From the IMG/VR virus record IMGVR_UViG_3300024239_000014, positions 1 through 64,000 of that record: a stretch of DNA of 64,000 bases; one strand, given 5' to 3'. Below are positions 36,861-43,187 of this stretch, in pieces. Below the pieces are notes generated by a model. The model made no database searches. It was not told the DNA's origin and saw only the letters and a program-made list of their open reading frames with translations. The stretch's first letter is position 1. Every line of letters begins with the position of its first letter. The position numbers were made by a program, and so were the translations under genes.

Positions 36861-37988
36861 TTAACTGTCTTCAAAAAAGAGGGCAGCCCCAACTTTCGAG
36901 CCTTCCAGCATCAGTCGGCTCATGATACCGATCTGATAAGGAGAACCCACGATACGGTTAAAAATCGACATGTGTCCGAACTTGCCGTCCAGCTGCAAAC
37001 CGGACTCGGTTTCCATCACCCCTTCGTACGTTCGACAGGTTACGGATTTCAGCTGGTTACCAAACACCAACTTATCACCGCCGCCGTAGTCTTCTTCGTA
37101 GGTAATGAAATAACGCACCGCCACGGTATCCTGTTCAAGTGGATACCCTTCGATTCGTACCCGGTCCATGACTTCGCCGTCTTCTGCTTCGTCGTTCCGG
37201 AGTTTCCGGACCAATGCAGCGCGTTTACGGTTGTAGGCTTTCACCAACTCCCGCAATGAGTCGGACATGTCTTCGAGGTCCCCTCGATAAAAGACCTCAA
37301 TCTTTTCCACCGTACCCTCGACTTTCGCCTTGGGTGTATGGGATGACAGCATCTTCAAAGTGTCCAACGACATCTCGTCGAAGAGCCCTGAATTGGCCGT
37401 CAGTTGGTCTTCAATCGTACATAGAATTGAGTCAGAGTCAACGATTTCGCCCTCTTTCACAATCCCACGGACCTCTTGGTCGAACTTCAAAATCACTGCT
37501 TTGACTTTCGTGAGTTTGGTCTTAAGCTTCTCGGCAGAACGTGACATCAACGCCGAGGAGTCCTCAAACGTATCTGCGTCATCAAGGATCGCCACGTTAA
37601 ACAGTGCGCCAGATTTCCACAACACCTGTGTCGGGTAGAAGTGGTCTCTGACGAACCAGTGACTATTCCAAGCCAAGACATCGCCCTTAACGAACGATTG
37701 ACCAACCACCACATCTGTTTCTACCTGATGTGGATAGCAACTCCCTTCAGCCCGCCCGAAGCGGCGACCGAGTTCTACCGACGTAACGGTCCCGTCTTTG
37801 TACTCGATCAACAGATGGTTCGGGCTAACCTCTTTCACCATCCCATCAGCCGTCGCAGCAAATGCGTAAAGGTCGCCCACACGCTTAGACAGGACATTTT
37901 CATATCCGGTCACAGTCGGCATGTAGGTATAACCTTCAGCAGCAATACCTGACGATTGTTGGATGCTGGCAAAGAGGGCACGTTTCAT
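36861..37988 (-). CDS. virion RNA polymerase beta-like subunit (gp178-like), exon 2
   Basis: MKRALFASIQ, TFEDS, GDKLVFGNQLK (RpoB GDK motif). Confidence 0.9.
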   Translation of the reverse strand: MKRALFASIQQSSGIAAEGYTYMPTVTGYENVLSKRVGDLYAFAATADGMVKEVSPNHLLIEYKDGTVTSVELGRRFGRAEGSCYPHQVETDVVVGQSFVKGDVLAWNSHWFVRDHFYPTQVLWKSGALFNVAILDDADTFEDSSALMSRSAEKLKTKLTKVKAVILKFDQEVRGIVKEGEIVDSDSILCTIEDQLTANSGLFDEMSLDTLKMLSSHTPKAKVEGTVEKIEVFYRGDLEDMSDSLRELVKAYNRKRAALVRKLRNDEAEDGEVMDRVRIEGYPLEQDTVAVRYFITYEEDYGGGDKLVFGNQLKSVTCRTYEGVMETESGLQLDGKFGHMSIFNRIVGSPYQIGIMSRLMLEGSKVGAALFFEDS

Positions 37989-38330
37989 CTAATGTCTTCA
38001 ATGTGGCCTAACCACACCCGTGCACCGCATGCACTGCTCCAGGTTTTCCCTGGATGTAGAGACTATATCTTCACCCTCGCTGGATTTGCGATAGGGTGCC
38101 TCCCATTTCGGCGGATGCCTACGAGCTCGCGCTCTAGTCGTTGAACGTTCTTCCCAGTAGGAAGCTTCGCTGCGGATTACCCAATCCCAGTCTCTTTTAC
38201 CATACCCAAGTGATTAGCTTGGCCACCTGTACATTACTGTTACAAGCTTGGTGTACTGGGCTTTCAGTGGATTCCCGTCAGTTAGAGAGGATTCGCTACC
38301 GGATTACGCCGGTAGAGGACTATGTAAATA
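37989..38330 (-). mobile_element. group I intron, 342 nt, no internal ORF
   Basis: P (AACUGACGGGAA 38283-38272), Q (AAUCCGCAGC 38178-38169), R (GUUCAACGACUA 38146-38135), S (AAGAUAUAGUC 38071-38061); P1 with U-G wobble at the 5' splice site; terminal G; splicing gives in-frame HDD|MKRAL. Confidence 0.93.
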
Positions 38331-41300
38331 ATCGTCGTGAACGATCGAGGGTGACAGGTTACCAGTAGTACTCAACACCGATGTCAACCCGTCGCCATTC
38401 TTGTCGAACGCTCGTGTGACACCATAAAGGTTGGTGAAGTTCGGATCAGAAGACAGGTAGGTGTTCACCGCCACTTCAGACGAGTCCACCGTTGCTTCAG
38501 AAACCACCCCGAAGTCAGAATCATCGTACGCACGTGTGCTGCGCACCATGGTGCGACTACTGCGACCGCCAGTACCACCAAAGGTCACAGCTTCCTGTTC
38601 TTTCAAGTGGTGAACCGGGTTGATGTCCTGCACCAGTGTGATACTCGGATCGCTCTGAATTGCATTCCATACCGCATTGGGCTTGATGTCAATGCTGGCT
38701 CGACTCGTTACCGGTTTTCCATGGTACTGTTTCAGCGCCATAGCCAATTCACGATACACGGCACCGGCAATACGCTCGTAGCCTTTGAATCGATCTGGAC
38801 GGTGTTCCACTTCATCATTCTGAAGCATTTCCACGGAGCGGAAAAGCAGCCCATCAAAAGTGGTTGGTTCCTGGTAGCTTTCCAGCAACGTCTTCGTGAT
38901 CGGATCTACGAAGTGCAGCATCAGCACATCAAGCTCACGCAGCTGTCTGGCTGTCATCCCAAGCCCATCGAGCAGGTTCAGGTAGACATCCTGCCGGTTG
39001 AACTCCTTCACGGAATAGTGCGACATCTGCCGGTGGAAACGGTTCATGCCAGAAAGCACCAACGCTGCTTTTCGGTCGTGGCGCGACAGAGCCCAGGTTT
39101 CATCCTTAAAGCGCAGTGAATATTCACCATGCTCCAGGGTGGCCTTTTGCCCCTTGGGAATACGGCGAGGTGTTACCCCCAGTCGTCGGCAGAGTTCGTC
39201 CAAACCGAAGTAGTAGCCGAAGACAAACCCGAGCGGGATTTCCTTACCGGCCACTTTTATCTCGATCTGTTCAATCGGCGCTTGGTTGTTATCAAAACCA
39301 ACCAGATCGCCAATATCGCCCACTGGCATTGGTTTACCGTCTTCCGTGGTATAAAGCGCATCGCGATCATCGACGTACAGGAACTTCGAGTTGTCTTCAC
39401 GTCGTCCCATGACCACCAAGCCGTCGATCTCACCTGCCAAGGCATCTGCACCAAAGAAGGCGGCGCGGTTGTCGTAGTCGAAGTTCAACTCCCAGCCATT
39501 TACGGTAAAGCCGATAAAGCGACTGGTCAGGATGGTGTACAGACGAGGAAGGCGCGACCCCTTCTTCCGACCCTGGGTTTTGTACGCCAGCTTGGAAACA
39601 GTGGCGTTATCACCCATTGACATGTAGATGATGCGGTTCTGCAACCACCGACCGTAGTTGTGCACGGCCTTCTCAGAACGTTTCACAAAGAGCTTGCCGT
39701 AGTAGCTGGTCAAAGCCACTTTATCCGGAGCCACCTTGTGGATCGGACAATCACCTCGTTGCTTACGCAGACGGTATTTCACGCCATCGGCCACCCAGCT
39801 ACCGTCTTCAGCCACGACCGGCAGCTCGATCCGCACGGTCGTGGGTTTGCCAGCCACTGGGACCAGTTTAACAGTGATCACGTCGTATTTGTTCAGAGCG
39901 TCTTTGACGCGCTCTACTTCGTACGACGTCACGGCAACACCCGAATGCTGCAGCGACATGATCATCCGCGCTACGTCTCGATGCAGGACGTCTTTGATGT
40001 ACGCCTTGTCGAAATCGAGCAGCGTACTTCTCAGCATGGTCTTGTCAGTGACTGCTTCATGGTCAGTTACAGAGAGTCGTTCGGGCTTCAACGAAACATC
40101 GCTGTCTTTGACATCAATCAAGTCAGCCAATGTCCCTTGACCAAAGGGGTTTTCGATGGACTTGTAACTGTTCGCCAGTTTTTCAAAGCGACGAAATTCG
40201 GCTCCAGAAATCATAGCGTGTTCAAGCAAGCGTTCAGCGCTGTGGATTACACCGAGTTCCGGTTTCGCAGTCAGGTCAATCGCCGCTTTACTTTCATTAC
40301 CCACCTGCCCCAGTTCCACACCAGGGATGTGGAGCTCAAACAGATCGTCATTCCAAATGTCCACAGCACCTTCTGCCAGAGCTTCGAGTTCTTCGCGATA
40401 CTCGTCAGCTTCTTTTTCAGACATTTCAGGAATGGCGGCTTCCTGCTCTTCTGGCATCGGTGTATCTTTCAGACGTTCAGGTACGGTAGCGCCTGGTGCT
40501 TCGCTACCGCTGTCGCTTTCATCGTCAGTGTCGTGGACTGGCGGTAGATCACTGTCTTCTTCGACAGCATCGACCTGTACTGCGGTGAAGACGTTTTCAG
40601 CACGCAGCTTGGCGAGTTGGATAAAGAAGTAGTAGACCTTCCGTTGAAAGGTTTCCATGCTTGCATCGATGACATCACCATCGGTCTTTGCACGCGCTTT
40701 GCGCCACCCATCCAATTGACCGAGGTTGATCACCCCACCCTGACCGTTATCAGTAACCACCAGGTTCACACGAGCCAGAGCCTCGGGCTTGATTTTCGAC
40801 AGCAACGACTCACCGTGCTTCTTACCAGCCCAAGTCCACAGGTCGAGCAGAAACATCGACTCGTACGTCGACAACGATTCCACCACGTTTTTAGACAGGC
40901 TATTTTCACCCATCTTCAACAGCGCTAACCGCGGCAGGTGTTGCGGTAGGTTGATGTGGATGTAATGCTGACGATCGCTCTGGATAGCAATGTCGTTGAT
41001 GGTTTCGATCATCGTGGCAAAAATGTTCTGCCAACGATAATAGTTTGCCATGAAGTTAACGGGGTAGCGGTACAGATGCTGGAGTAACGCGTAGTTGATA
41101 ACCAGGGTAGACCGCAGGTCACGATCCACCATGTCAAACTGCCGCACCCGTCTGAGCAGACGGTTCTTCTTCTCCAGGTCGCGGATTGCAGTACCGGCAT
41201 TGATAGACCCCATGCGAATAGGTCTACCTACTTCACTTTTAAGTTCTGCCACATGCTGACAGTACAGCAACCCGCCCTTGCGCTGAATGAACGGGTCGTT

Positions 41301-41459
41301 GTTATCCAACGACCGTTCTTGTGTGTTCAGTGGCAGATAATGGTACACCGGCCGTAGGGGAAAGGCCAATTCAACCAAGGGCTTAAATGCAAAGCCTGTC
41401 AGTTGTTGCTCTTTCCACACCCCGTTCTTACGGTAGTACTGTGGGTATTTTAAAAACAT
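38331..41459 (-). CDS. virion RNA polymerase beta-like subunit (gp178-like), exon 1
   Basis: GTGGRS.R.M and SEATVDS motifs; ends in HDD; spliced product 1418 aa. Confidence 0.9.
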
Positions 41460-41469
41460 TCGACCGTCC

Positions 41470-43098
41470 TTATGCTGGGGTGGTCAGAAGTGACTTCAGC
41501 ACGAGTGTGATGGTGTCGTTGTTGGCTGAAGTCACCAGCTTCCCTGACGCACTGATCGCAAAGGACCGGCTGTGCAGGTAGCGCTTGATTTCTTCACCAG
41601 AATCTTTCAGGTAGACAGTTTCTGCCGAGCAGGTATCGCCGTCATAGTCACCACCCAGATCGGCCAAGAACGCCGGGTGGGGTGCCATCGTGGAAATAAA
41701 CTTCGCATTGATGTCGGTGTCGGGAAATTCACGTGCCGTAAACTCGGCGCCTTTAGGTTCCCACGCTTCGTCCAACTCAATCTTGGCAGACGCTTTGACA
41801 GTAGTCCGACAATACAGCTGCGACGGGTACATACTTCCCACGCCTGCTACCGGATAGCGGGTTACAAAGGTGTACAGTTCGTACCACTTCTGATATCCAC
41901 TCAGGTAGAACAGTTCAGTGTACGTCATCGGATGGACATTCTTGCGACTCAGATTCTTCGGCAGGTCTTCAATGTCATTAAAGACCTTGAAGTGCTTGTC
42001 GTCGCTGTACACGAGCCCCAAGTAATACCCTTCAATCTTCACGGGCTTTTGACGCAACTTGGGATTTTCAAATGCTTCAATGAGCTTCTCGATCCCAGCC
42101 GCTGTTGTCCACTTGTCGATGGTTTCCACGCCGACTGATTTGTATTCAGCTTTGAGCGTTTTAGGGTTTACCAATAACGCGTCACGATCCGCGCCAGCAA
42201 AGACGTGACTGACCACGCCGGTCAAGATAAGGTGTACTGCTACAGGTAAGGCTGACTTCAGTGTTTGATACAACCCCATCTGGGTGTTGATCACGGACAT
42301 ACTGCGCAGACCACCGAAGTAGTCCGCCACGGTGTCCATTGAAGAAATAACGTTACGTGTCCCGTTGAATACGCGACGACTACCCCATTTAGCCTGAACG
42401 AACCCTTTCTTGCCGTAAAGGATTTCAGCGATCTTGTCGTAGATATCCGTGAACGCTCGTTCAAGACTCAGGCGAGCTGGGTCGAACGCGGAGTCGTCGT
42501 AACTGTTGACGTTACCAAGCGTGTTGCTGACCGCAATCAGGCGACGATAGGGGTCGTTGATCTCATCTTCGATGGTACGACCGTACTCATCTACCTCAAT
42601 GTCGCGCAGCCCAGCAGGAAGAACCAGGATCTTGTCGACCATGGCAACGCTGCGGTACTTTTCAACAAACTGCAGCGCAATACGACGGCGGATGCTTTTG
42701 GTTTCTCCAAATACAATCGATTGCCACTTTTCGGCAAAAAAACCAAATCCGGTTCCAGCACCATCCTCTTCAGGTAGTGCAGGAACAAAATCATTCTTTT
42801 GACCATCCCACTTGGCGTAGGCTTTACCGGTAGCAACGTCACCGTATAGGCCTTTCAGGTCCACCAGACGTCGATAAATCAGCGGGTGGAAGATCAAAGC
42901 TTTGATGTCGATGTAACCGAAGTTGGTATCGCGTTCAGGACTCCCGACTCGGCCAAAGGTCGTTGTAGAAAACAGACCATCTTCATGGTAGTTGTTGGTC
43001 ATCCCGTCGAAGATATCGAGCGACTTCACTTGGCGCATGGCCTTAAGTGATTCGGTCGTGGGTTTCAACAACCGTAAATTAAAGGGCGCTTTGGCCAT
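41470..43098 (-). CDS. virion RNA polymerase beta'-like catalytic subunit (gp180-like)
   Basis: GLFS..FG, VLPAGLRD, TRYP and catalytic GGDYDGD motifs. Confidence 0.92.
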   Translation of the reverse strand: MAKAPFNLRLLKPTTESLKAMRQVKSLDIFDGMTNNYHEDGLFSTTTFGRVGSPERDTNFGYIDIKALIFHPLIYRRLVDLKGLYGDVATGKAYAKWDGQKNDFVPALPEEDGAGTGFGFFAEKWQSIVFGETKSIRRRIALQFVEKYRSVAMVDKILVLPAGLRDIEVDEYGRTIEDEINDPYRRLIAVSNTLGNVNSYDDSAFDPARLSLERAFTDIYDKIAEILYGKKGFVQAKWGSRRVFNGTRNVISSMDTVADYFGGLRSMSVINTQMGLYQTLKSALPVAVHLILTGVVSHVFAGADRDALLVNPKTLKAEYKSVGVETIDKWTTAAGIEKLIEAFENPKLRQKPVKIEGYYLGLVYSDDKHFKVFNDIEDLPKNLSRKNVHPMTYTELFYLSGYQKWYELYTFVTRYPVAGVGSMYPSQLYCRTTVKASAKIELDEAWEPKGAEFTAREFPDTDINAKFISTMAPHPAFLADLGGDYDGDTCSAETVYLKDSGEEIKRYLHSRSFAISASGKLVTSANNDTITLVLKSLLTTPA

Positions 43099-43187
43099 AG
43101 TGGACTCCGTCAGCGTAAAACTATGAGGGTTCCCAACGACCAATCCGCGCCGGGGTGTAACGAACCCGACAGGCGCCGATAGTCTAT

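What the first reader, a model, noticed from the sequence alone, without database searches (positions are those of the whole stretch)
37989..38330. ORF-less group I intron splits the virion RNAP beta gene at the conserved HDD motif
Seen: the exon ends GAU, paired in P1 (GAU|UAU-uuac-AUAGUC, U-G wobble); P/Q/R/S are intact; omega-G at 37989; the product reads HDDMKRALFASIQ, matching RpoB HDDANRALMG. An in-frame stop at 38304-38306 makes splicing essential, and the exon 2 ATG makes gene callers report two genes. No homing endonuclease is recognisable inside or nearby. Known: RNAP-gene introns occur in phiKZ-like phages.
Basis: partly seen in the sequence, partly recalled or inferred. Interest (0 to 1): 0.65.

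Follow-up and report, generated by a model that had tools for sequence, protein, structure and literature searches.

The report
ORF-less group I intron in phage vRNAP gene
A 342-base self-splicing-type (group I) intron with no gene of its own interrupts an essential RNA-polymerase gene of an uncultivated jumbo phage, at the same spot where phage PhiPA3 carries a known endonuclease-bearing intron, so it is a real but fairly ordinary new member of a known kind.

Summary
Window 37989..38330 (minus strand) is a group I intron: Rfam RF00028 scores 78.5 bits, E 2.8e-18, and it is the only Rfam hit in the window. It splits a phiKZ-gp178-type RNAP beta gene after the codons for ..VHDD.

- Junction: the two ORFs abut exactly on one PHROG profile (positions 1050|1051). 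Uninterrupted relatives read ..HDDMKR.. across the predicted joint.
- Fold: nine ORF-less introns at the same site support it by covariation. The G-C/A-U/U.G pairs at the 5' splice site are invariant in all nine.
- Endonuclease: the intron holds no ORF. The 250-kb genome has no HNH or LAGLIDADG gene; its only homing-endonuclease-like gene is an I-TevI-like ORF inside a split thymidylate synthase gene about 115 kb away.
- Known precedent: this is the insertion site of the PhiPA3 gp210 (HNH) intron (Birkholz 2024).
- Frequency: 25 of 76 metagenomic relatives carry an insertion at or within 12 nt of the site. Eight of those are ORF-less introns at the exact site.
- Splicing itself is inferred. 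Public RNA and DNA contigs showed only the unspliced form.

Verdict: a new member of a known kind, of modest interest.

The parts
38331..41459 (-). Exon 1 of the virion-RNAP beta-like subunit gene (1043 codons, ends ..SIVHDD)
   Evidence: ORF 38304..41459. Residues 3-1043 match PHROG 3148 'RNA polymerase beta subunit' positions 2-1050 of 1424. tblastn gives about 44% identity to chimallivirus gp178-type genes.
37989..38330 (-). Group I intron, 342 nt, ORF-less, with P7.1/P7.2 (subgroup IA-like)
   Evidence: Rfam RF00028 at 78.5 bits, E 2.8e-18. Hand-built helices are all canonical apart from one C.C in P1. No sense ORF lies within it.
36861..37988 (-). Exon 2 (375 codons plus stop, starts MKRALFASIQ)
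   Evidence: Residues 1-365 match PHROG 3148 positions 1051-1414. Residues 3-106 align to T. thermophilus RpoB 557-656, E 6.8e-4. tblastn gives about 45% identity to relatives.
38315..38336 (-). P1 hairpin: exon GACGAU plus intron UAU (38328-38336), loop UUAC, internal guide AUAGUCCUC (38315-38323). The 5' splice site lies between 38331 and 38330 at a U.G wobble.
   Evidence: The three exon pairs G-C, A-U and U.G are invariant in 9 of 9 ORF-less same-site introns.
38304..38306 (-). TAA that ends the exon 1 reading frame 8 codons into the intron
38296..38315 (-). P2 hairpin CUACCGG-CGUAAU-CCGGUAG. In relatives the HNH ORF lies between P1 and the P2/P3 region.
   Evidence: 100% of cells are paired and 7 of 7 pairs carry compensatory changes.
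38099..38290 (-). P3 (38285-38290 with 38099-38104), enclosing P4 (38274-38280 with 38171-38176), P5 with its 81-nt extension (38183-38273), P6/P6a (38145-38170), the P7 5' strand GACUA (38135-38139), P7.1 (38123-38134) and P7.2 (38110-38119)
   Evidence: P3 is 100% paired with 5 of 6 compensatory pairs. P4 is 86-100% paired and P6/P6a 89-100%. P5, P7.1 and P7.2 are only weakly supported in the MAFFT alignment.
38061..38098 (-). P8 (38072-38098), J8/7 AAGAUA and the P7 3' strand UAGUC (38061-38065; the S element)
   Evidence: P8 is 91% paired with 6 compensatory pairs. P7 is invariant in all 9.
37989..38054 (-). P9 (38038-38054), P9.1 (38020-38034), P9.2 (38001-38017), tail UGAAGACAUUA and the terminal G (omega-G) at 37989
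   Evidence: These helices are 85-94% paired with compensatory changes. The GAAGA..G tail is shared by same-site introns whose exon 2 starts CCN.
41470..43143 (-). Upstream neighbour: another RNAP subunit gene (557 aa). It gives context for the operon and is not part of the intron.
   Evidence: PHROG 2986 'RNA polymerase beta subunit', E 4.5e-203.

Best explanation
Window 37989..38330 (minus strand) is a 342-nt group I intron without an ORF. It carries the extra P7.1/P7.2 hairpins typical of phage subgroup IA introns. It sits directly after the second Asp codon of the conserved (H/N)DD motif in the beta-like subunit gene of the virion-packaged RNA polymerase, the orthologue of phiKZ gp178 and PhiPA3 gp211+gp209. 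The host is an uncultivated 250-kb phiKZ-like jumbo phage.

Inferred mechanism:
1. The pre-mRNA folds into the ribozyme.
2. An external guanosine attacks the phosphate after the U of the U.G wobble in P1 (between 38331 and 38330).
3. The freed exon 1 end then attacks after the terminal G at 37989.
4. The ligated message encodes one protein of 1043 + 375 residues that reads ..SIVHDD|MKRALF.. across the joint.

Without splicing, the frame stops 8 codons into the intron.

The intron belongs to a family that occupies this same site in many relatives. About half of the occupied alleles carry an I-HmuI-like HNH homing endonuclease ORF near the 5' end, as in PhiPA3 gp210. This copy has none, either by loss or because it never gained one, so it cannot move on its own and is inherited vertically. 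Because it splits the endonuclease's target sequence, it probably also makes the gene immune to such enzymes from co-infecting phages (inference).

Shown here: intron identity, boundaries, fold conservation, absence of an ORF, site identity. Inferred: catalysis in vivo, history of the ORF, immunity.
For: **Intron identity**
- Rfam RF00028 gives a full-length match at 78.5 bits, E 2.8e-18, and is the only Rfam hit in 64 kb.

**Junction**
- Exon 1 residues 3-1043 match PHROG 3148 positions 2-1050, and exon 2 residues 1-365 match positions 1051-1414.
- In FLC9, LucasX, RTH11, RP12/RP31, FLC1-1B/4-3B and Viktualia the two halves are contiguous, with exactly one codon for residue 1 of exon 2.
- 51 of 76 IMG/VR relatives are uninterrupted at the site.
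- Three of those read ..HDDMKR.. (L050, L055, L087), matching the predicted joint.
- Exon 2 residues 3-106 align to T. thermophilus RpoB 557-656, that is the ..NRALMG.. block.

**Structure**
- All hand-built helices are canonical except one C.C in P1.
- On nine ORF-less same-site introns, 85% of cells are paired against 69.9% in shuffles.
- 42 pairs have changes on both sides, against 23.4 +/- 3.0 in shuffles (0 of 500 reach it) and 11-19 in slid controls.
- P2 and P3 are 100% paired, and the P1 G-C/A-U/U.G pairs are invariant.
- The same trend holds for nine intron cores of the family: seven at the DD site (five of them HNH-bearing) plus the PhiPA3 DNA-polymerase intron and L007 intron B.

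**Same site as a studied intron**

**Relatives must splice**
- The eight ORF-less same-site relatives aligned in A3 start exon 2 with CCN or GGA, not a start codon.

**No endonuclease**
- The intron holds no ORF.
- The genome has no HNH_3, HNH, HNH_5, LAGLIDADG, Endonuclease VII or NUMOD1 match.
- tblastn with five same-site HNH proteins finds nothing better than E 0.028.
Against: There is no direct evidence of splicing.

- In four public runs, two of them true metatranscriptomes, every contig that crosses either junction is unspliced: X5 records 20 and 23, X9 records 27 and 28, X19 records 2 and 8. No joint skipping 37989-38330 was seen.
- Contigs drop rare forms, and DNA may contaminate RNA libraries, so this result is uninformative rather than negative.
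- P1 is short and carries a C.C mismatch.
- P10 is at best 3 bp (AUG with CAU).
- P5, P7.1 and P7.2 are not well supported in the MAFFT alignment.
- Minimum-free-energy folding alone does not recover the native fold and is only marginally better than shuffles (z -1.88).
- Exon 2 happens to start with ATG, so separate translation is not formally excluded.
Confidence: 0.88

Rival explanations
1. The ribozyme is a splicing-dead relic and the gene is now a split gene. Exon 1 plus the 8 read-through residues, and exon 2 started from its own ATG at 37988, are translated separately and assemble in the polymerase, like the other naturally split subunits of jumbo-phage RNAPs.
For: - Exon 2 begins exactly with ATG, and exon 1 meets a stop 8 codons into the intron.
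- Only unspliced contigs were seen in RNA libraries.
- Gene callers output two genes.
- Jumbo-phage RNAP subunits are often split (PMC7598289).
Against: - The core scores 78.5 bits, with every conserved element and the terminal G intact.
- The fold is kept by compensatory changes across relatives.
- The eight aligned ORF-less same-site relatives have no start codon at exon 2, so the family must splice.
- Met after DD is an ordinary variant in uninterrupted genes, seen in 11 of 51.
- The GAAGA stretch before the ATG is a conserved intron tail, not a dedicated ribosome-binding site.
- The break would fall inside the most conserved HDD-x-(K/N)R active-site block.
Confidence: 0.06
2. The intron is still mobile, driven in trans by a free-standing homing endonuclease encoded elsewhere in the phage ('collaborative homing', as proposed for the cyanophage psbA introns; that comparison is from my own knowledge).
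For: - The genome does encode one homing-endonuclease-like protein: GIY-YIG + NUMOD3 + I-TevI DNA-binding domain, G000:C1 about 152.4-153.3 kb.
- The record is only about 90% complete, so a gene could be missing.
Against: - That endonuclease sits inside a split thymidylate synthase gene, the classic T4 td/I-TevI arrangement, about 115 kb from this intron. Its expected target is td.
- No HNH of the type linked to this site exists in the genome.
- Neither neighbour of the gene is an endonuclease.
Confidence: 0.04
3. The intron is real, but the 3' splice site is another G nearby, for example the G of the ATG at 37986, which would give a protein one residue shorter.
For: Several G residues lie within a few bases of 37989, and P10 is weak.
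Against: - Uninterrupted relatives have exactly one residue between DD and (K/R)R.
- All aligned same-site introns end in G directly before that codon.
- A cut after 37986 would delete that residue.
Confidence: 0.02

Closest known systems
PhiPA3 gp210 intron in the vRNAP gene gp211/gp209 (Birkholz et al. 2024, Science; PMC11620839)
   Same: - Same gene (phiKZ gp178 orthologue).
- Same insertion point, directly after the second Asp codon.
- Same ribozyme architecture (P7.1/P7.2, P9-P9.2, GAAGA..G tail).
- Exon 2 also starts ATG AAA CG.
- Core identity is about 55%.
   Different: - The PhiPA3 intron is 1352 nt and encodes a 330-aa HNH_3/NUMOD nicking endonuclease. This one is 342 nt with no ORF.
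- PhiPA3 has the short P5 form. This one has the long P5 extension (GGUAUGGUAAAAG) also seen in L010, L011, L019, L051 and L073.
Unannotated 348-nt intron at the same site in Pseudomonas phage HPP-Temi (PP968062)
   Same: It is ORF-less, sits at the same site, and is an Rfam group I hit at 70.5 bits. The record annotates the gene as two 'RNA polymerase beta subunit' CDS.
   Different: It has the short-P5 core type and only about 52% identity. Its exon 2 starts CCG (Pro), and its P1 guide is GUUAUUG rather than GUCCUC.
PhiPA3 DNA polymerase intron (between gp085 and gp084)
   Same: It is the best DNA match to this intron: 74% over 255 nt by blastn and 68.5% in alignment. It has the same long P5 extension.
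   Different: It lies in a different host gene and at a different insertion site.
ORF-less group I introns of phages such as Twort orf142 and the ORF-containing T4 td/nrdB/sunY introns (from my own knowledge; Landthaler & Shub 1999 is cited in PMC11620839)
   Same: They are subgroup IA-type phage introns in conserved parts of essential genes. Some lack an endonuclease, and several can occur in one genome.
   Different: They occur in other genes and other phage families. No sequence comparison was made here.
Introns in RNAP genes of Bacillus jumbo phage AR9 (Lavysh et al. 2016, from my own knowledge; cited in PMC12908238)
   Same: Group I introns interrupt multisubunit RNAP genes of a jumbo phage.
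   Different: A distant phage lineage. Sites were not compared here.

Membership tests
Group I intron (Rfam RF00028) | Covariance-model score above the curated gathering score | tested here: met
   78.5 bits against a gathering score of 50, E 2.8e-18, model positions 1-253.
Group I intron (Rfam RF00028) | Conserved core helices P3-P8 with the P/Q/R/S elements, supported by covariation | tested here: met
   P3 and P6 are 100% paired, P6a 89%, P4 86-100%, P7 invariant and P8 91%. 42 pairs show double changes, against 23.4 +/- 3.0 in shuffles.
Group I intron (Rfam RF00028) | 5' splice site after a U that forms a U.G wobble in P1 with an internal guide sequence | tested here: met
   GAU|UAU pairs with AUAGUC. 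The G-C, A-U and U.G pairs are invariant in 9 of 9 same-site introns.
Group I intron (Rfam RF00028) | Terminal G (omega-G) at the 3' splice site that restores the reading frame | tested here: met
   G at 37989. Every same-site intron whose 3' junction was read ends in G. The joint matches uninterrupted homologues.
Group I intron (Rfam RF00028) | GTP-dependent self-splicing | not testable with these tools
   Contigs from four runs show only unspliced junctions, which is uninformative.
Subgroup IA (Michel-Westhof classification, from my own knowledge) | Extra hairpins P7.1 and P7.2 between the P7 5' strand and the P3 3' strand | tested here: inconclusive
   Two hairpins, GAGC-GCGA-GCUC and GGC-AUCC-GCC, fit in the 27-nt insert that Rfam leaves unaligned. 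Relatives have differently sized hairpins there, and MAFFT columns give only 50-70% pairing.
Mobile (homing) group I intron of the PhiPA3 gp210 type | Same insertion site in the vRNAP beta gene | tested here: met
Mobile (homing) group I intron of the PhiPA3 gp210 type | Intron-encoded HNH/NUMOD homing endonuclease | tested here: not met
   The intron holds no ORF. The genome has no HNH family hit. It therefore works like the ribozyme part of that element but is not a mobile intron.
Virion RNAP beta-like subunit (phiKZ gp178 orthologue) | Full-length collinear homology to the gp178-type family | tested here: met
   PHROG 3148 is covered over positions 2-1414 of 1424 by the two exons. The best phage hits are the genes annotated as gp178 homologues.
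Virion RNAP beta-like subunit (phiKZ gp178 orthologue) | Protein packaged in the virion | not testable with these tools
   Assigned by orthology only. gp178 is described as virion-packaged in PMC11620839.
Intein | In-frame protein-coding insertion | tested here: not met
   The exon 1 frame stops after 8 codons, and no long sense ORF is present.

The most novel reading that the evidence does not exclude
The endonuclease-less intron is kept by selection, not inertia. By splitting the HNH target at the DD codons, it acts as a cheap immunity allele. It would protect the essential vRNAP gene from gp210-type 'weaponised' homing endonucleases of co-infecting chimalliviruses. That would explain why ORF-less introns of two different core types recur at this one site in many lineages.
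Probability: 0.25. Interest if true: 0.55.

Novelty: new member of a known kind. Interest (0 to 1): 0.33.

Why it matters
For annotation, the two 'RNA polymerase beta subunit' ORFs at 38304..41459 and 36861..37988 are one gene. The same mis-split exists in GenBank records such as HPP-Temi.

For biology, it extends the single studied case (the PhiPA3 gp210 intron) to a picture in which the DD codons of the vRNAP beta gene are an intron hot spot in phiKZ-like phages:
- About a third of metagenomic relatives are occupied at or next to this site.
- Endonuclease-bearing and endonuclease-free forms both occur.
- There are two ribozyme core types.
- There are two further nearby insertion sites.

That material suits a study of the homing cycle (gain, ORF loss, intron loss). 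It also allows a test of whether bare introns protect against endonuclease-mediated interference between co-infecting phages. In itself the finding is not surprising to a specialist.

Tried and rejected
- **megablast of the gene region against 50,697 phage records:** no match. The phage has no close sequenced relative.
- **Pfam on the exon ORFs and neighbours:** no hit. The proteins are too divergent, and PHROGs was needed.
- **phmmer of the last 400 aa of exon 1 against PDB:** only chance hits.
- **Minimum-free-energy folding of the intron:** it does not give the native pseudoknotted fold (z -1.88). It was not used as evidence.
- **Sequencing runs:**
  - The phage, as 95-99% variants, occurs in subsurface and wastewater metagenomes from several studies, always with the intron.
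  - No spliced joint and no intron-less DNA allele was seen.
  - Two 60-nt contigs ending exactly at 37988 look like arms of a SNP bubble (k = 31) rather than a splice signal.
  - High depth at 38012-38213 comes from the conserved cores of unrelated introns.
  - This gives no verdict on splicing.
- **Rfam at E 0.1 on the split td locus:** nothing.
- **tblastn of five same-site HNH proteins against the genome:** nothing significant.
- **Intein, and an alternative 3' splice site:** both considered and rejected (see rivals and membership test).

Each exon was searched by reference on its own.

The large protein searches were not used because the family scans settled the identity.

Full report
**1. 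What is in the sequence**

All features lie on the minus strand.
- A 1051-codon ORF (38304..41459) reads ..SPSIVHDD and then runs on for 8 codons (YLHSPLPA) to TAA at 38304-38306.
- A 375-codon ORF (36861..37988) starts ATG AAA CGT GCC = MKRALFASIQ.
- Between GAT (ending at 38331) and ATG (starting at 37988) lie 342 nt.
- Rfam RF00028 (group I intron) matches 38037..38340 over the whole model at 78.5 bits. The gathering score is 50 and E is 2.8e-18. It is the only Rfam family found in the 64-kb window.
- The alignment shows the classical P (AACUGACGGGAAUCC), Q (AAUCCGCAGC), R (GUUCAACGACUA) and S (AAGAUAUAGUC) stretches.

**2. The gene and the exact junction**

Pfam is blind to these proteins. 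PHROG 3148 ('RNA polymerase beta subunit', 1424 positions) is matched by exon 1 residues 3-1043 at profile positions 2-1050. Exon 2 residues 1-365 match positions 1051-1414, a perfect abutment at the proposed splice site.

tblastn finds about 310 phage records, nearly all phiKZ-like jumbo phages, at 40-47% identity.
- In FLC9, LucasX, RTH11, RP12, RP31, FLC1-1B, FLC4-3B and Viktualia, the exon 1 and exon 2 matches are contiguous. Exactly one codon stands for the first residue of exon 2.
- In 76 IMG/VR relatives, 51 are uninterrupted.
- In those 51, the residue after DD is P (23), M (11), A (10), G (3), S (3) or F (1).
- Three of them read ..HDDMKR.. (L050, L055, L087), which is the predicted joint.
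- Exon 2 residues 3-106 align to Thermus thermophilus RpoB 557-656, starting in the ..NRALMG.. block.

The PhiPA3 homologues are annotated as similar to phiKZ gp178. The literature describes gp178 as the beta subunit packaged in virions (PMC11620839). Virion packaging of this particular protein is an inference from orthology.

The exons were handled separately by reference.

**3. Structure of the intron**

A hand-built model gives these helices:

| Helix | Sequence | Note |
|---|---|---|
| P1 | GACGAU\|UAU with AUAGUCCUC | U.G at the splice site, one C.C mismatch |
| P2 | CUACCGG / CCGGUAG | |
| P3 | CCUCUC / GGGAGG | |
| P4 | UG(A)CGGG / UCCGCA | |
| P5 | AAUCC / GGAUU | plus an 81-nt extension |
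| P6/P6a | GC / GU; CUUCC / GGAAG | window 38145-38170 |
| P7 | GACUA / UAGUC | |
| P7.1, P7.2 | two small hairpins between P7 and P3' | the mark of subgroup IA (from my own knowledge) |
| P8 | CACCCU / AGGGUG; CGC / GCG | window 38072-38098 |
| P9, P9.1, P9.2 | UCCAGG / CCUGGA; GUGCA / UGCAC; GUGUGG / CCACAU | window 38001-38054 |
| Tail | UGAAGACAUUAG | ends in omega-G at 37989 |
| P10 | AUG with CAU | at best 3 bp |

An alignment of nine ORF-less introns from the same site (own, HPP-Temi, L019, L046, L051, L067, L073, L079, L090) was scored against this model.
- 85% of cells are paired, against 69.9% in shuffles.
- 42 pairs have changes on both sides, against 23.4 +/- 3.0 in shuffles (0 of 500 reach it) and 11-19 in slid controls.
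- P2 and P3 are paired in every sequence, with compensatory changes in 7 of 7 and 5 of 6 pairs.
- P8, P9, P9.1 and P9.2 are 85-94% paired.
- P7 and the three exon pairs of P1 (G-C, A-U, U.G) never vary.

A second alignment of nine intron cores gives the same picture. Seven of these cores sit at the DD site, five of them endonuclease-bearing. The other two are the PhiPA3 DNA-polymerase intron and L007 intron B.

P5, P7.1 and P7.2 are poorly resolved because MAFFT cannot align the variable peripheral hairpins. Plain energy folding is uninformative.

**4. No endonuclease**

The only sense-strand ORFs of 20 aa or more that touch the intron are the read-through tail of exon 1 and a 21-aa TTG frame at 37936-38001, which lies almost wholly in exon 2. 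The window belongs to a 249,640-bp IMG/VR virus record, about 90% complete.
- Six-frame family scans of that genome find no HNH_3, HNH, HNH_5, LAGLIDADG_1/3, Endonuclease VII or NUMOD1.
- tblastn with five HNH proteins from same-site introns gives nothing better than E 0.028.
- The single GIY-YIG hit is an I-TevI-like protein at about 152.4-153.3 kb. It lies between the two halves of a split thymidylate synthase gene, a td/I-TevI-like arrangement unrelated to this site.
- The flanking genes here are another RNAP subunit (PHROG 2986) and a conserved protein of unknown function (PHROG 3841).

**5. Comparison with what is known**

Birkholz et al. 2024 (PMC11620839) showed the following for PhiPA3:
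[quoted passage not shown] - The enzyme damages the intron-less gp178 of phiKZ during co-infection.

In PhiPA3, exon 1 ends NDD, a 1352-nt insertion follows, and exon 2 starts MKRVGF. That is the same site as here.

Pseudomonas phage HPP-Temi carries an unannotated 348-nt ORF-less intron at the same place.

Among the 76 IMG/VR relatives, 25 have an insertion at or within 12 nt of the site:

| Insertion size | Loci | Content |
|---|---|---|
| 1.3-1.7 kb | 13 | An HNH_3/NUMOD ORF in ten of the eleven ORFs scanned. L047's 356-aa ORF has no Pfam hit. L086's 466-aa ORF, at the same coordinates as L062's, was not scanned. |
| 335-479 nt | 9 | No room for an ORF. Eight sit exactly at the DD site. L095 sits 12 nt downstream. 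|
| 640-818 nt | 3 | Intermediate. |

Rfam confirms most of these as group I introns.

Two core types occur at the site. One has the long P5 extension (own, L010, L011, L019, L051, L073). The other is short (PhiPA3, HPP-Temi, L007A, L008, L046, L067, L079, L090). Each type is found with and without the endonuclease, so the ORF has been gained or lost more than once.

This intron's nearest DNA relative is the PhiPA3 DNA-polymerase intron (74% over 255 nt by blastn, 68.5% in alignment). The same-site introns are more distant at 52-62%.

In the searched literature, only the PhiPA3 case is described for this phage family.

**6. How it most likely works, and the rivals**

The best reading is a self-splicing ribozyme whose removal is required to make the full-length subunit. 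It is immobile for lack of an endonuclease, is inherited vertically, and probably shields the site from gp210-type enzymes because it splits their target (inference).

The main rival is a dead intron with two separately translated polypeptides. Four points weigh against it:
- the intact, covarying core;
- the eight aligned ORF-less same-site relatives, whose exon 2 starts CCN or GGA and therefore cannot be translated alone;
- Met after DD is a normal variant in uninterrupted genes;
- the conserved GAAGA..G tail also stands before CCN exons.

Mobility in trans and a shifted 3' splice site are unlikely (see the rival explanations).

**7. RNA evidence**

The phage, as 95-99% variants, is present in subsurface and wastewater runs from several studies. 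Contigs from two DNA-like and two metatranscriptome runs cross both junctions only in the unspliced form. No joint skips the intron. Contigs hide rare forms, and RNA libraries may contain DNA, so this neither supports nor refutes splicing.

**8. Verdict**

The element is a new, endonuclease-free member of an intron family already known at this exact site. It is useful for correct annotation and as material for studying intron and endonuclease turnover in phiKZ-like phages, but it is not a surprise.

Noticed in passing
Own genome outside the window: G000:C1 about 151.9-153.9 kb (locus L017: 477-755, 961-1818, 1857-2498, all minus strand): The thymidylate synthase gene is split: Pfam PF00303 positions 1-168 and 176-266. 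Between the halves lies a 285-aa GIY-YIG + NUMOD3 + I-TevI DNA-binding ORF, an arrangement like T4 td/I-TevI. Rfam finds no group I core there even at E 0.1, so the intron is either missed because the ORF splits it, or is something else.
   Followed up: partly
Own genome outside the window: G000:C1:242299-242698 (-) (L004) and C1:216137-216393 (+) (L005): Two more ORF-less group I introns (69.6 and 57.1 bits). One lies in another RNAP beta-like subunit gene (PHROG 2987) and one in the DNA polymerase gene (PHROG 3011). The phage therefore has at least three introns in its transcription and replication genes.
   Followed up: partly
L007 (IMGVR_UViG_3300036546_000129) 1489-2996: The vRNAP gene carries two group I introns only 11 nt apart. 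Intron A (1489-2605) has an HNH ORF and sits at the DD site. An 11-nt micro-exon, CCAAAACGAGT (2606-2616), follows. Intron B (2617-2996, ORF-less) comes next. L082 has the same tandem layout. L085 and L095 have only the downstream site occupied.
   Followed up: partly
L073 3510-3810, L082 3488-3730, L086 3500-3797: A third group I intron site lies about 900 nt into the exon 2 part of the same vRNAP gene in several uncultivated relatives (74-102 bits).
   Followed up: no
L002 = PP968062.1 (Pseudomonas phage HPP-Temi) 119668-120012: The GenBank record annotates the interrupted gene as two 'RNA polymerase beta subunit' CDS, plus a 39-aa 'hypothetical protein' that lies inside an unannotated 348-nt group I intron.
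   Followed up: yes
window 37989-38330 compared with L006 (PhiPA3 74587-74844): The ribozyme core is closer to the PhiPA3 DNA-polymerase intron (68.5-74%) than to any intron at its own insertion site (52-62%). This hints that cores move between genes within jumbo phages.
   Followed up: partly
window 38012-38213: In wastewater runs this stretch has 10-50 times the depth of its flanks, and many contigs diverge at 38033, 38060, 38075-38081, 38135 and 38153. These are the conserved core segments of many unrelated group I introns in the samples, not extra copies of this phage.
   Followed up: partly
L047 1298-2368: One same-site insertion of 1399 nt carries a 356-aa ORF with no Pfam hit, unlike the HNH_3/NUMOD ORFs found in the other large same-site insertions that were scanned.
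   Followed up: no
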